DNA of 62,988 bases from Malacoraja senta (lineage: Eukaryota). The stretch lies in NCBI GenBank assembly GCA_038087875.1, contig JAXLNO010005625.1:744001-806988 (forward strand). Reading direction: 5' to 3'. Below, piece by piece: positions 10,330 to 15,457 of the stretch. A program made the translations under genes and the position numbers. How positions within the stretch are numbered: position 1 is the stretch's first letter; each line of letters opens with the position of its first letter. Below the pieces are notes generated by a model, which saw only the letters and a program-made list of their open reading frames with translations, searched no databases and was not told the DNA's origin.

Positions 10330-10390
10330 TTTACTTCGGAGTCACGTGAGTGACTACGTGAAGAAGTCCCGTCCAGCCGCACACGCGTCA
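10330..10390 (+). repeat. DIRS left terminus (left extension plus ITR)
   Basis: 10330-10364 is the reverse complement of 15117-15151; 10355-10390 is the reverse complement of 15347-15382 with 1 mismatch. Confidence 0.92.
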
Positions 10391-10564
10391 TTATCGATCA
10401 GACGCATAGCGTTCATGACCGTGTGTGAAGGAGCAGCAGCTCCTCCACGCGGTGAGTAAAAGCAACATAAGTAGAAATCGGATAAGGTAAGTGCTTTCGT
10501 TTTCACTTGCAGGGCGCTTTTCTTCCCGCTCAGACGTGTTGGCAGAGTTCCACACAACTTAGAA

Positions 10565-11854
10565 ATGGAGAAAGGGCGTAGAGGAAGGAGAGGCCAGGGA
10601 CGCACCGCAGGTAAAACCCCCGATGTTAAGGGTAGCGGGCGTCAGGAAGAGGAGGTAATGGCATCGAAGCCATCTACTCCCGTTACAGTCGAATGTGCCG
10701 TTAAACCGCCGGCGGCGGGGCGCAAGGCTGGACAAAAGTCGGCCTGACCTGTAGACTCAGAAGAGTCAGACCCGGAGGAATACCCTCCTGCAGAAAATGT
10801 TATGGCTGCAAGGGTCGCTAGCTTAGAGCTCCTAATGGGGAAAATGATATATAAAGAACCCCCACAGGAGGAAGCAGGTCGGTGTTGGCCAATGGAAGAC
10901 ACAGCACAGGGTGTGCCTTGGTTGGGACAGGCACAAGGGTGGCCTACAGGAGAGCCATCAGAAATGACTGTGCAAAGTTATTACAGTGGTTGGCCTACCG
11001 AAGAGCCAGTGCCCGAAATGCCTGGGAAAAGGCAATATATGGGCTGGCCTACTGAAGAGCCAGTAACAGGAATGTCTCAAAAAATGCAGTACAAACGTAC
11101 TTTTGTGCCAGCACCGAAAGTTCCTAAAGGGAAATTGATGAAGCGTTGGCCTAGAATGGAGCCAGCGCCAGCAGCACCTAGAACAGGGCTGCCTACCCGT
11201 GGGACTATAGCAGAGCTTACGCGAGAAGATACTGGCATAGATTTACCTGAACAAGGGGATCCTGAAGTTACTCATCCTGATGAGGAACATCTAGACTCAG
11301 AAGATGAATTCTATGAGGATGAGAGCCCGGTATCAGAGTTGAAAGTTCCTGGACTAGCACAAAAGTTTGCTGTCCCCAGAATAAAAGGGGAACCTTTGAG
11401 AGAGGAAATAGCAATGACTATCAATTATTTACTTTCCCATCAGCTCCAGGAAGTAACTATGGATGAGATTATGAAACAGTATGAGCCCCCGGCGAATTGT
11501 GAATTGCTCACAGTTCCAACAGTTAATAACTTAATATGGAATTATTTGAGCATTGGATTACGCTCACAAGAATTGAAATTGCAACATGTACTGAAATTGC
11601 TGGGGTCAGGCATCACGGCATTTGCCAGAGGATTGGATGATGATTTTGTATCAGATTCACAACAAGATGCTTTAGAACTGATGTGTGGTGCTCATTTTGA
11701 AATAAATTGTATTCGTAAAAATGCAATAAGGCCAAATATTCAGCCTAAGTATGCAGGGCTCTGCAAACCAACCAACATACAAATGCCTAATTTACTGTTT
11801 GGAGAAAATCTATCCAGGAAACTAAAGGATTTGAATGAAGAGTCAAAAACCTGA
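10565..11854 (+). pseudogene. DIRS gag-like ORF1 with a premature TGA (10745-10747)
   Basis: ORF-track ORFs 10565-10747 and 10802-11854 are in the same frame; C-terminal PANCELLTVPTVN..IW block resembles DIRS ORF1 proteins. Confidence 0.75.
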
Positions 11855-11859
11855 GTGGT

Positions 11860-13974
11860 ATGATGATGCGACCACCAATGCTGAGCAGAGCGGTGCGAAG
11901 GCAGTATCCCTACAGGCGGAATGCTGGTGCTGGAGAAGGAACAAGCCGATCATTCTCGTATACACGTTGGCGTGCTGCACCGGGGATGCGTGGAGGTTAC
12001 AATGTGCCTACCAGAAGAGCACAACAATGGCCGGAGGCAAACCCCGAGGTAGGGGGTCCTGGTCTGGAAAGGAATATAAATGTTTCACATTCACAAATAG
12101 GGGGAAGGTTAAGATTCTTCCTAAAAGAATGGCAGTTAATAACAAATGATGCATTTATTCTAAACAGCATTGTAGGATTCAAAATTGAGTTCTATTCACA
12201 CTTGGATCCTCCAAGGCAGAAAAATTCAAGCTGGTCACGGATTTTCTCAAAAGAAGAGAATACGTTGATCAAAGGAGAATTAGAAATTTTGACCAAAAAA
12301 GGGGTAATAGAAAAGTCAGTAGAACAACACCATCAATTTGTATCAAATATTTTTCCTAGAACAAAAAAGGATGGTGGATGTAGAATCATTTTGGATCTGA
12401 CAAATCTAAACCTTTATGTACAATACAAACATTTCAAAATGGAAACATTTACTAATGCCATTCAGCTGATTATTAAAAATTATTACATGGCAAGCATAGA
12501 TTTGAAAGATGCATATTACTCTGTGGCAATGCATGGTGATGATCAAAGGTATTTGAAATTTAGATGGATGGGTCAGTTGTGGCAATTTAAAGCATTGCCC
12601 AATGGTCTGTCTTCAGCACCAAGATTATTCACTAAATTACTCAAACCAATTTTAGCTCTTCTAAGAGCTGAGGGCCATGTACTAATGGCTTATTTGGATG
12701 ATATTTTGATTGTAGGGGACACTTTGGCTGCTGCAAAATTATCAGTATCCAGGGTTAAGTTCATTTTTGAGAAAATGGGTTTCATTATTCACCTACAAAA
12801 ATCAAAATTGTTACCAAGCAAGAAGATTGATTACCTAGGGTTCACAATCAACTCAGAACACATGGTAATCACTTTGCCAAAAGAGAAAAGGCTGCAGCTA
12901 ATTGAAGGTTGCATCAAACTCATAAATGAGGACACACCCTCAATTAGAGAAGTGGCAAGCTTGCTGGGCAAATTGATTGCTGCGTTTCCAGCTGTAACAT
13001 TTGGACCATTGCATTATCAATGTTTACAGAGGGCTAAGGTACAAGCTTTAAAAATAAATACAGGGCATTTTGACCGGCCCATGAAATTAACAACTGAATC
13101 CATTACTGAAATAGAATGGTGGATTAACAAAGTTTCAGATGCTTCAAAAAAGGTTCTGGTAGAAATACCATCCGTCACTCTACAGACTGATGCAAGTGCT
13201 CTTGGTTGGGGTGCTACTAACATGATTTCCAGCTGTGGAGGTAGGTGGAATGTGAATGAAATACCTTTGCTGGAAAAACAGGGAATCAATTACCTAGAGC
13301 TATTAGGATCATTTCATGGTCTTAAAGCTTATTGTACTAATATGAGAAGTGTGCATGTCCAGGTACAGGTTGACAATACTACAGCTGTAGCATACATAAA
13401 TCACATGGGGGGTATAAAATCAGAATCATGTGATAGATTGGCAAATGAAGTTTGGACCTGGTGTATTGCAAGGAAAATTTGGCTGTCAGCAATATATTTA
13501 CCAGGAAAATTTAACACAATTGCGGACAAAAGATCACGTAAATTTAATGATAATATAGAATGGATGTTAAATCGGGAAATATTTACAAAAATTATAACAC
13601 AATTTGGAATGCCAGATATTGATTTATTTGCATCAAGACTAAACCACCAATTGCCTAAGTATGTTTCATGGGAACCTGATCCTGGTGCAGTAGCGGTAGA
13701 TGCTTTCTCGCTAAACTGGGGTGGTATGTTTCTGTATGTTTTTCCACCATTTTGTTTAATCCACAAATGCATACAGAAAATTAAATAAGATTCAGCCTCA
13801 GGGATTTTGGTAGTACCAGATTGGCCTACACAGGTATGGTACCCATTGGTGTTAAAAATGATCAAAAAAACCCTTATGGTTATTCCAAAGCAGATTAAAC
13901 TGCTTGTGAACCCTGTGACTAATGAGTCACATCCTTTACATAATCGTATTGGTTTGTTGATTTGCAGATTCTAA
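11860..13974 (+). pseudogene. DIRS RT / RNase H / adenine-methyltransferase-like ORF with a premature TAA (13786-13788)
   Basis: GGRL..F..EW; DLKDAYY; LPNGLSSAP; YLDD; RNaseH TDAS..GWG, ELL, DNTTAVAYIN; DLFAS...FPPF. Past the TAA the frame continues with DSASGILVVPDWPTQVWYP to a TAA at 13972-13974. Confidence 0.92.
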
Positions 13975-14957
13975 GAAGGCCATATCTTGGAAAAGGATTA
14001 TCAGACCGTACGGTGGATGTTATGACAGCAGCCTGGAGGAATAGTACCCAGAAGCAGTACATTTCCTATATAAAGAAATGGGAGGAGTTTTGTTCAGTAA
14101 AGAATATTGCATATTACACAGTAGACATTTCAGATGTAATAGAGTTTCTTTCAACTCTACACTATGAATTGAAATTAAGTTATAGTGCAATTAATACTGC
14201 ACGAAGTGCACTCTCTGCGTATTTAAGCAGTGAATTAGAACAAACTCCAATTGGATCACATCCTTGGGTCTGTAGGTTTATGAAAGGAATTTTCAACTCT
14301 AATCCTCCCAGACCCAGGTATACAGAAATTTGGAATGTAAAAGATGTACTGATGTTCCTAAGGAGTTGGAATCCAATTGAAACCCTGTCATTATCCAAAA
14401 TTACCATGAAATTGGTTATGCTCATGGCATTAGTTTCAGCGCAGAGAGTTCAAACATTACAGAAACTCAGAATTGATAGAATAAAAATAGGGCAAAATGC
14501 CGTGACATTCTATATCTATGATTTACTGAAGCAAAGTAGACCTGGGTCCACAGGATGCAAGGTGGAATTTTTAGCATATCCTACAGATTCACGACTGTGT
14601 GTAGTAACATATGTGAAATGTTACATAGAAACAACAAAAGTTTTAAGAGGCGCCGAATTGGCATTGTTTATTAGTCATAAAAAGCCTCATAAGAAAGTAT
14701 CGACACAAACAATCTCACGATGGTTGAAACAGGTTTTGAGATATTCAGGTATTGATACTGATAAATTTAAATCTCATTCCACCAGCGCAGCATCAACATC
14801 AGCGGCCAGGGATTCAGACGTGCCAATAGACCTTATTCTCGCGGCCGCAGGATGGGCAAGTGAACAGATGTTTCACAAGTATTACCACAAGGAGATTAAA
14901 GATCTCAGAGGGTTTGGTGATGCCGTGCTGGATACAGTATTAAATCCCCCATTATAA
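13962..14957 (+). CDS. DIRS tyrosine recombinase (open frame; H-x-x-R altered to HSTS)
   Basis: SAQR, KQSRPG, LFIS, ISRWLK, HSTSAA, AAGW, FHKYY. The first in-frame ATG is at 14022 and the real start is uncertain. Confidence 0.9.
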   Translation: MQILRRPYLGKGLSDRTVDVMTAAWRNSTQKQYISYIKKWEEFCSVKNIAYYTVDISDVIEFLSTLHYELKLSYSAINTARSALSAYLSSELEQTPIGSHPWVCRFMKGIFNSNPPRPRYTEIWNVKDVLMFLRSWNPIETLSLSKITMKLVMLMALVSAQRVQTLQKLRIDRIKIGQNAVTFYIYDLLKQSRPGSTGCKVEFLAYPTDSRLCVVTYVKCYIETTKVLRGAELALFISHKKPHKKVSTQTISRWLKQVLRYSGIDTDKFKSHSTSAASTSAARDSDVPIDLILAAAGWASEQMFHKYYHKEIKDLRGFGDAVLDTVLNPPL

Positions 14958-15116
14958 ATGGGCCTAATTTTGTTACTTTTATAAAATAAAACCATTAACT
15001 GATTACATTCAAATGTTGTGGTTATGCATTGTTGCTTGTGCTTACTCAAATAGAGTCAATCGATGCAGTGAACACCTGGATTTGAATCCACGGTGTGAAA
15101 TCACAGAGCTTTGAAA

Positions 15117-15230
15117 TCTTCACGTAGTCACTCACGTGACTCCGAAGTAAAATAGTAAGATTAAACGAGAACTTACCAAGTTTGAAGTTTGATCTTTATT
15201 TTATGTGGAGTAACGTTGAGGGATTACGTG
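15117..15230 (+). repeat. DIRS internal complementary region (lICR plus rICR)
   Basis: Reverse complement reads right end + left end (..CTTACTATTTTACTTCGG..); rICR 15150-15230 matches 15378-15457 with 1 mismatch. Confidence 0.95.
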
Positions 15231-15346
15231 CCCTCCGCTCCCACCCTCATAAAAAGATCAAGCTGGTAGTTCTAAGTCTTTATGCATCTTACTATCATAC
15301 TTCAGTAATTATCGTCTGTGATTGTCACTCCGCTGCTTTGAAAGAT

Positions 15347-15457
15347 TGACGCGTGTGCGGCTGGACGGGGCTTCTTCACGTAATCCCTCAACGTTACTCC
15401 TCATAAAATAAAGATCAAACTTCAAACTTGGTAAGTTCTCGTTTAATCTTACTATTT
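15347..15457 (+). repeat. DIRS right terminus (ITR plus right extension)
   Basis: Complementary to the left ITR and to the rICR. Confidence 0.92.

What the first reader, a model, noticed from the sequence alone, without database searches (positions are those of the whole stretch)
10330..15457. Complete DIRS1-type element recording its circle junction and a TTT integration site inside an L1
Seen: the reverse complement of the ICR (15117-15230) reads right end joined to left end (CTTACTA-TTTT-ACTTCGG). The host L1 reads ATA AAA at the right junction and AAA ATG at the left. Removing the element plus one TTT restores GCA ATA AAA ATG ATC (AIKMI), matching AIKMF in the second L1 at ~53700. Established: DIRS1 elements are thought to form circles via the ICR and integrate by YR recombination without a conventional TSD. 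Inference: the crossover core is TTT, and the ICR carries one more T than that circle junction requires.
Basis: partly seen in the sequence, partly recalled or inferred. Interest (0 to 1): 0.75.

Follow-up and report, generated by a model that had tools for sequence, protein, structure and literature searches.

The report
DIRS1-type jumping gene inside an L1

Summary
The structure is real. A 5.1-kb DIRS1-like tyrosine-recombinase retrotransposon (inverted terminal repeats, internal complementary region or ICR, gag / RT-RH-MT / YR) sits in a decayed L1-like ORF2 on the minus strand.

The reverse complement of the ICR reads right end-ATTTT-left end, and both genomic junctions read ATTTTA.

- Five related families, two with this junction letter for letter, share ATT at 12/12 right and 10/11 left junctions.
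- The left end then starts with TT.
- One such copy reads ATT|ATAT, which excludes a TTT core.

So the ICR carries no surplus T. Instead the occupied site is one T shorter than the commonest L1 form. It matches a rarer 4-T form, or a later 1-base loss.

The copy is coding-dead: two in-frame stops, and the recombinase's catalytic Arg is replaced.

First readers of this scan flagged the same kind of junction on other pieces of this genome.

The parts
10328..10330 (+). Left copy of the ATT core (junction host|ATT|left end)
   Evidence: By homology with the junctions of L001-L029.
10331..10390 (+). Left terminus / left ITR. The outer part (to about 10364) pairs with the ICR left arm. 10347-10390 pairs with the right ITR.
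   Evidence: I3 (37 nt, 100%) and I2 (44 nt, 93%).
10565..11851 (+). Gag-like ORF1 frame, with ATG at 10565. Broken by an in-frame stop at 10745-10747. Contains a 54-nt tandem duplication at 10961-11068.
   Evidence: D1. No Pfam hit. Other copies in the runs read differently at 10745.
11839..13971 (+). Pol frame: RT (RVT_1, about 12445-12850), RNase H-like TDAS..GWG motif (about 13186-13215), Dam/MT-like C-terminus (about 13558-13785). Broken by an in-frame stop at 13786-13788.
   Evidence: RVT_1, E 5e-21. (Dam PF05869, E 0.0055, below cut-off)..
13944..14957 (+). Tyrosine recombinase frame with no ATG at its start. SAM-like N-domain plus catalytic domain. Ser replaces the catalytic Arg of H-x-x-R at 14784-14786.
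   Evidence: Phage_integrase E 1.7e-9, Phage_int_SAM_4 E 1.5e-8. (alignment A1). (985 homologues).
15117..15230 (+). Internal complementary region. Left arm 15117-15150 is the reverse complement of the left end. AAT at 15151-15153 is the complement of the core. Right arm 15154-15230 is the reverse complement of the right end.
   Evidence: I1, I3. (alignment A2 with seven relatives).
15347..15453 (+). Right terminus: right ITR (15347-15390) plus right extension that pairs only with the ICR. Ends CTTACT.
   Evidence: I1, I2..
15454..15456 (+). Right copy of the ATT core (right end|ATT|host)
9189..10327 (-). Host L1-like ORF2, part downstream of the insertion (KMIFLPQ..., zf-RVT). A further frameshift lies at the A-run 10258-10266.
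   Evidence: (zf-RVT, E 5e-4, below cut-off).
15457..16823 (-). Host L1-like ORF2, part upstream of the insertion (RT domain, ends ...LIGRINAIK). Several in-frame stops further upstream. An N-run starts at 16824.
   Evidence: (RVT_1, E 1.5e-27).

Best explanation
This is one copy of a DIRS1-like retrotransposon.

Proposed life cycle. Its RNA is reverse-transcribed. The two ends of the cDNA are brought together and completed on the element's own ICR, giving a circle whose junction reads CTTACT-ATT-TTACTTCGG. The element's tyrosine recombinase then exchanges strands between the ATT of that junction and an ATT in the target. Here the target ATT is the one at the start of the ATTTT(T)A run in an already decayed L1 ORF2.

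Result. The product is host|ATT|element|ATT|host. One ATT comes from the circle and one from the target, so there is no true target-site duplication.

Shown versus inferred.
- Shown: the architecture, the protein domains, the junction sequences, the empty-site forms, and the ATT rule in relatives.
- Inferred from the published model: the circle intermediate and strand exchange by the recombinase.

The one-base mismatch. The commonest L1 form has five T; the occupied site implies four. My rough split of the explanations:
- About 50%: this L1 copy carried the rarer 4-T form before insertion.
- About 35%: a later one-base loss in a T-run, or a homopolymer error in the assembly.
- About 15%: an imprecise circle junction.

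The copy can no longer supply its own proteins: it has two in-frame stops and a substituted catalytic Arg.
For: - Architecture: ITRs and an ICR whose two arms abut and pair with both termini. RVT_1, Phage_integrase and its SAM-like domain are found. A weak Dam-like match lies at the pol C-terminus.
- Junctions: both read ATTTTA and the reversed ICR reads CTTACT-ATTTT-ACTTCGG.
- Relatives: ATT is the only stretch shared by junction and flanks in L001. The same holds for L002 (little skate) and L003, for L004, L008 and L009, and for L026, L028 and L029. In L005 and L022 the match runs a few letters beyond ATT. Overall ATT is present at 12/12 right and 10/11 left junctions.
- L003's ICR is 96% identical to the window's over 141 nt and its junction is identical.
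- Empty site: joints in L1 paralogues skip 5125 (5 T; the main form), 5126 (4 T; one contig, 6 letters fitting either side) or 5124 (6 T). The circle length predicted from the ICR is 5126.
- ICR and right end change together. A one-base deletion at 15178 and its pairing partner near 15428 occur in 56 and 57 contigs of X1, and in 65 and 65 of X2. In relatives the arms are 98.4-100% complementary over 61-84 nt, mostly 100%.
- Literature: a 3-bp circular junction, ATT the commonest, and integration at an identical genomic triplet without duplication (PMC3266345). The ICR is experimentally essential (PMC7192593).
Against: - Only one copy of this exact family was available, with none elsewhere in the window. 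The ATT assignment therefore rests on relatives whose recombinases are only 48-56% identical, although two share the same junction sequence.
- In this copy the shared stretch is six letters (ATTTTA), so the copy alone cannot place the exchange point.
- With the commonest 5-T target, the ATT model predicts five T at the right junction; four are seen.
- No circle-junction molecule was observed.
- L007's left junction reads GTT rather than ATT, so the first core position may lie outside the exchanged stretch.
Confidence: 0.85

Rival explanations
1. The exchanged core is TTT, the circle junction holds three T, and the ICR carries one T more than the circle, so the ICR is not a faithful template of the junction.
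For: Arithmetic on this copy: eight T at the two junctions minus the five T of the commonest L1 empty site leaves three. TTT termini are reported for Xenopus and one Anolis DIRS1-like family (PMC3266345 Table 3; PMC9210276).
Against: - L003 has the identical circle junction but only two T after CTTACTA at its right junction.
- L004, L007, L001 and L026 have a non-T letter directly after ATT.
- ICR and termini stay in exact register, in this family's population and in relatives. This argues that the junction is copied faithfully from the ICR.
- A 4-T empty-site form exists among L1 paralogues.
Confidence: 0.07
2. Extended-homology version. The recombinase needs the whole ATTTTA (six letters, as in classical tyrosine recombinases with 6-8 bp overlaps). 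It therefore picked one of the rare 4-T L1 copies.
For: - In this copy, junctions and ICR share all six letters. The 4-T joint fits with six letters on either side and a skip equal to the circle length.
- Seven of 12 right flanks in the junction table begin with TT after ATT.
Against: Relatives integrate with only ATT shared (L001, L003, L004, L026, L028). In family E the TT after ATT is not homologous to the left end, so a T-rich target preference explains the data as well.
Confidence: 0.15
3. A conventional 3-bp target-site duplication made by a staggered cut (integrase- or transposase-like), with the element ending exactly at TTACTTCGG...CTTACT.
For: A 3-bp repeat flanks the element. Formally that is indistinguishable from a duplication in any single copy.
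Against: - The triplet is ATT at nearly every junction in five families rather than varying with the target.
- It also sits between the two ends inside the ICR.
- No DDE integrase domain is present; the only recombinase is a tyrosine recombinase.
Confidence: 0.02

Closest known systems
DIRS1-like retrotransposons of animals, as annotated by Piednoel et al. 2011 (PMC3266345; e.g. AcaDIRS1/2 of Aplysia, 5.2-5.8 kb, ATT/ATT/AAT)
   Same: - gag / RT-RH-MT / YR order.
- ITRs with a short divergent and a short conserved part, and a long right extension.
- Two abutting ICR arms (here 34 and 77 nt plus the 3-bp overlap).
- A 3-bp circular junction AAT and termini bounded by ATT; no target-site duplication.
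- A roughly 10-nt motif (TCTTCACGTA here) present in both ITRs and at the ICR.
   Different: A different family: the best recombinase matches are only 48-61% identical. This copy has broken reading frames. Repbase and Dfam could not be consulted, so whether the family is already named is unknown.
Xenopus and Anolis DIRS1-like families with TTT termini (XtDIRS2/3, AcDIRS2; PMC3266345, PMC9210276)
   Same: Vertebrate-type DIRS1-like architecture, with a T-rich trinucleotide at both ends that complements the ICR junction.
   Different: Those use TTT/AAA. Here and in the closest relatives the shared triplet is ATT, and the extra T letters belong to the left end.
Dictyostelium DIRS-1 (Cappello model; tested in PMC7192593)
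   Same: The ICR is complementary to both termini and is thought to template the circle junction. The ICR was shown to be essential for retrotransposition.
   Different: Different ORF arrangement and much longer inverted LTRs. No experiment exists for the animal families. Circle junctions have not been recovered even in Dictyostelium.

Membership tests
DIRS1-like superfamily (order DIRS) | Reverse transcriptase domain | tested here: met
   RVT_1, E 5.3e-21, above the Pfam cut-off.
DIRS1-like superfamily (order DIRS) | Tyrosine recombinase ORF instead of a DDE integrase | tested here: met
   Phage_integrase and Phage_int_SAM_4 are above cut-off. R, K, H, W and Y are conserved in alignment A1. 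This copy has Ser at the second catalytic Arg.
DIRS1-like superfamily (order DIRS) | Inverted terminal repeats | tested here: met
   10347-10390 against 15347-15390: 44 nt, 93% complementary (I2).
DIRS1-like superfamily (order DIRS) | ICR whose two arms are complementary to the start of the left terminus and the end of the right terminus, overlapping on a 3-bp junction | tested here: met
   I3 (37 nt, 100%) and I1 (83 nt, 99%) abut in 15148-15153. The AAT overlap is placed by homology with L001, where the overlap is exactly 3 bp.
DIRS1-like superfamily (order DIRS) | Element bounded by the trinucleotide complementary to the ICR junction; no target-site duplication | tested here: met
   ATT at 10328-10330 and 15454-15456. 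Empty-site forms are seen in L1 paralogues. The same rule holds in relatives.
DIRS1-like superfamily (order DIRS) | Methyltransferase (Dam-like) domain downstream of RT/RH, which separates DIRS1-like from Ngaro and VIPER | tested here: inconclusive
   Dam PF05869 E 0.0055 and PCIF1_WW E 0.002, both below cut-off, with the domain cut by the stop at 13786. Related pol products carry Dam hits marked weak or faint.
DIRS1-like superfamily (order DIRS) | RNase H domain | tested here: inconclusive
   No Pfam hit. A TDAS..GWG motif is visible at about 13186-13215.
Ngaro / PAT-like YR retrotransposons | Split direct repeats (A1...B1 A2 B2) instead of ITR plus ICR | tested here: not met
   Beyond a 54-nt tandem duplication inside gag (D1), only short chance-level direct repeats of 27 nt or less. 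The long repeats are all inverted.

The most novel reading that the evidence does not exclude
The cis-acting end module (ICR through right terminus) may be under stronger and more multi-layered constraint than the proteins.

- The ICR is 93-96% identical, and the ICR-to-right-end stretch 83-85% identical, between this element and L002/L003. Their coding DNA is only about 66% identical and their recombinases 54-56% identical.
- A block GGTAAGT..TCGTTTAATCTT is conserved, with a few substitutions in the two most distant families, in all five families, including ones from marine metagenomes.
- That block contains a perfect 5' splice-site-like AG|GTAAGT.

If real, the termini would do more than template the junction. 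They could serve as a recombinase binding site plus an RNA-level signal, or the end module could be exchanged between families.
Probability: 0.25. Interest if true: 0.45.

Novelty: new member of a known kind. Interest (0 to 1): 0.2.

Why it matters
It is a clean natural record of a DIRS1-type integration. The occupied site, the element's own copy of its circle junction and many empty paralogous sites can be read side by side, and they agree with the published 3-bp-core model.

It adds no new mechanism. Its use is as a worked example and as a correction: in T-rich targets the apparent core (TTT, TTTT or ATTTTA) is inflated by chance identity, and comparison with relatives is needed to see that the constant part is ATT.

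The strong conservation of the end module across families is the only lead that might repay further work.

Tried and rejected
- Other copies in the window: none found by blastn or tblastn.
- Flanks of other genomic copies from public runs: the runs are kept only as short contigs that stop at repeat borders. No flank of another copy of this family could be read; only L1 empty-site joints and family-wide variants came out.
Three look-ups returned gene tables but no DNA.
- L027's contig end runs right end-ATT-left end. I rejected it as evidence for a circle or tandem, because an assembler can take the same path through the reverse complement of the ICR.
- DNA similarity between the host L1 and the second L1: none. 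The AIKM comparison holds at protein level only.
- I did not identify the organism. The skate match (L002) is to a different family, so it says little about the host.
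Full report
**1. What is there**

Between the two T-runs lies a 5.1-kb element. Counted as left end to right end plus one ATT (10331-15456), it is 5126 bp.

- Repeats. The repeat finder gives three long inverted pairs:
  - 10347-10390 with 15347-15390 (44 nt, 93%): the inverted terminal repeats.
  - 10328-10364 with 15117-15153 (37 nt, 100%).
  - 15148-15230 with 15377-15459 (83 nt, 99%).
- The last two pairs are the two arms of an internal complementary region (ICR, 15117-15230). 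They pair with the outer left and outer right ends.
- Read backwards, the ICR gives right end, ATTTT, left end.
- Beyond a 54-nt tandem duplication inside gag, direct repeats are short and chance-like, so there are no LTRs or split direct repeats.

Coding frames:

| Frame | Coordinates | Evidence | Damage in this copy |
|---|---|---|---|
| gag-like | 10565-11851 | No Pfam hit | In-frame stop at 10745-10747 |
| pol | 11839-13971 | RVT_1 E 5e-21; TDAS..GWG RNase H-like motif; weak Dam/PCIF1-like C-terminus, E 0.002-0.006, below cut-off | In-frame stop at 13786-13788 |
| tyrosine recombinase | 13944-14954 | Phage_integrase and its SAM-like N-domain | Ser where all eight aligned homologues have the Arg of H-x-x-R |

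Contigs of other copies read differently at 10745 and 14786, so at least those two defects are private to this copy. The element is structurally complete but coding-dead.

**2. The host**

On the minus strand the flanks translate as an L1-like ORF2.

- RVT_1 (E 1.5e-27) lies upstream and a weak zf-RVT match downstream.
- The protein ends ...LIGRINAIK at 15455 and resumes KMIFLPQILY... at 10332.
- This L1 copy is decayed. It has several in-frame stops upstream and a further frameshift at the A-run 10258-10266.
- A second, only distantly related L1 on the plus strand reads LIGRINAIKMFILPKF at about 53690-53740. This confirms a single Lys between Ile and Met.

**3. The empty site**

Contigs of four public runs, covering three organisms, were laid on 10230-15560. 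They contain joints that skip the whole element.

| Joint | Skip | T in empty site | Support |
|---|---|---|---|
| 10329->15455 | 5125 | 5 | 8 contigs in X1, 3 in X2, 1 each in X3 and X4 |
| 10327->15454 | 5126 | 4 | 1 contig in X2; six letters fit either side |
| 10330->15455 | 5124 | 6 | 1 contig in X2 |

- Their summed depths (hundreds) show these are L1 paralogues, not this locus.

**4. Where the exchange point lies**

No other copy is in the window, and the runs' short contigs stop at repeat borders. I therefore fetched relatives through homologues of the recombinase.

| Locus | Relation to the window's element | Left junction | Right junction |
|---|---|---|---|
| L003 | ICR 96% identical over 141 nt; identical reversed junction CTTACT-ATTTT-ACTTCGG | not in contig | CTTACT\|ATT\|ATATAT |
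| L002 (little skate) | ICR 93.6% identical | CCTGTG\|ATT\|TTACTTCGG | CTTACT\|ATT\|TTTTTT |
| L001 | related family; the two ICR arms overlap by exactly three letters (AAT) | ATT | ATT |
| L004-L009 | further family | ATT, except L007 (GTT) | ATT |
| L022 | further family | ATT | ATT |
| L026 | further family | ATT | ATT |
| L028/L029 | further family | ATT | ATT |

- In total ATT stands at 12 of 12 right junctions and 10 of 11 left junctions. The exception, L007, has GTT on the left.
- The aligned reversed ICRs keep ATT in one column (alignment A2).
- The window's junction is therefore right end CTTACT, core ATT, left end TTACTTCGG. The four T of the ICR are two from the core and two from the left end.
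- A TTT core is excluded by L003 and by every copy with a non-T letter right after ATT.

**5. The one-base discrepancy**

Strand exchange conserves length. The T count at the two junctions (4+4) must equal circle (4) plus target.

- That fits a 4-T target (skip 5126 = circle length), not the commoner 5-T form.
The evidence places it in the host.
- ICR and termini are kept in exact register. A one-base deletion at 15178 and its pairing partner near 15428 occur in 56 and 57 contigs in X1, and in 65 and 65 in X2. In relatives the arms are 98.4-100% complementary, mostly 100%.
- The host L1, by contrast, is a decayed copy with other indels, and a 4-T form exists among its paralogues.
- I cannot tell whether the copy had four T before insertion, lost one later, or the assembly miscounts a homopolymer.

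**6. Comparison with what is known**

- Piednoel et al. describe exactly this (PMC3266345): two ICRs overlapping on a 3-bp circular junction; elements that begin and end with the complementary triplet (NTT, most often ATT; TTT in Xenopus and one Anolis family); and integration by recombination with an identical genomic triplet without duplication.
- The Xenopus survey reports TTT at both ends (PMC9210276).
- Malicki et al. showed that the ICR is essential in Dictyostelium. They restate the trinucleotide idea, and they could not recover circle junctions (PMC7192593).
- The finding is thus a new copy or family of a known kind that behaves as the model says.
- First readers of this scan noted the same on other pieces of this genome: an ATT core in s1-210378, s1-141487 and s1-141518, and ATTTTA in s1-187709. 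Those notes are unchecked, and they agree with what I found on independent DNA.

**7. Limits**

- The ATT assignment for this family rests on relatives, not on further copies of the family itself.
- No circle junction or recombinase activity was observed.
- Repbase and Dfam were not available.
- The organism was not identified.

Noticed in passing
window 15100-15456; L001-L029 (alignment A2): The ICR-to-right-end module is far better conserved than the genes. The ICR is 93-96% identical to L003 and L002, against about 66% for coding DNA. The block GGTAAGT..TCGTTTAATCTT is conserved in all five families with a few substitutions.
   Followed up: partly
window 15427-15435 (right end) and the same place in L001-L029: The conserved right-end block contains a perfect 5' splice-site-like motif (A/T)G|GTAAGT on the element's sense strand, downstream of all ORFs. 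Its complement sits in the ICR. Other readers of this genome proposed splicing in DIRS elements; I did not test this.
   Followed up: no
L007:25-45 (left junction): One marine-metagenome copy has GTT instead of ATT at the left junction and ATT at the right. This is what is expected if the first letter of the triplet lies outside the exchanged stretch, making the true overlap only TT.
   Followed up: no
junction table: window, L001-L029: Seven of 12 right flanks start with TT directly after ATT. This includes family E, whose left end does not start with TT. It hints at a preference for ATT followed by T-rich DNA.
   Followed up: no
window 10230-10407, 15036-15560 versus 10408-15035: Summed contig depth over the termini and ICR is roughly 5-20 times that over the coding part in X1 and X2. 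That is compatible with many coding-less or truncated derivatives that keep the ends. L1 flanks and the tool's depth caveats may also contribute.
   Followed up: no
window 10961-11068: A 54-nt tandem duplication (74% identical) inside gag encodes repeated GWPTEEP-like units (D1).
   Followed up: no
window 51646-54790 (+), insertion at about 52283-53660: The second L1-like ORF2 is itself split by a 1.4-kb GC-richer insert ending in (ATT)n, just upstream of its LIGRINAIKM motif. The insert's 250-aa ORF has no Pfam hit.
   Followed up: partly
window 24135-25181 (+); 381-1994 (-): Other mobile elements fill the window: a GIY-YIG ORF (Penelope-like; E 3.5e-4, just below cut-off) and an RVT_1/DUF7041 ORF.
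   Followed up: no
L027:5058-5149: A metagenome contig ends by running from the right end through ATT into the left end. This could be a circle or tandem junction, or an assembly path through the ICR's reverse complement. It cannot be told apart here.
   Followed up: no
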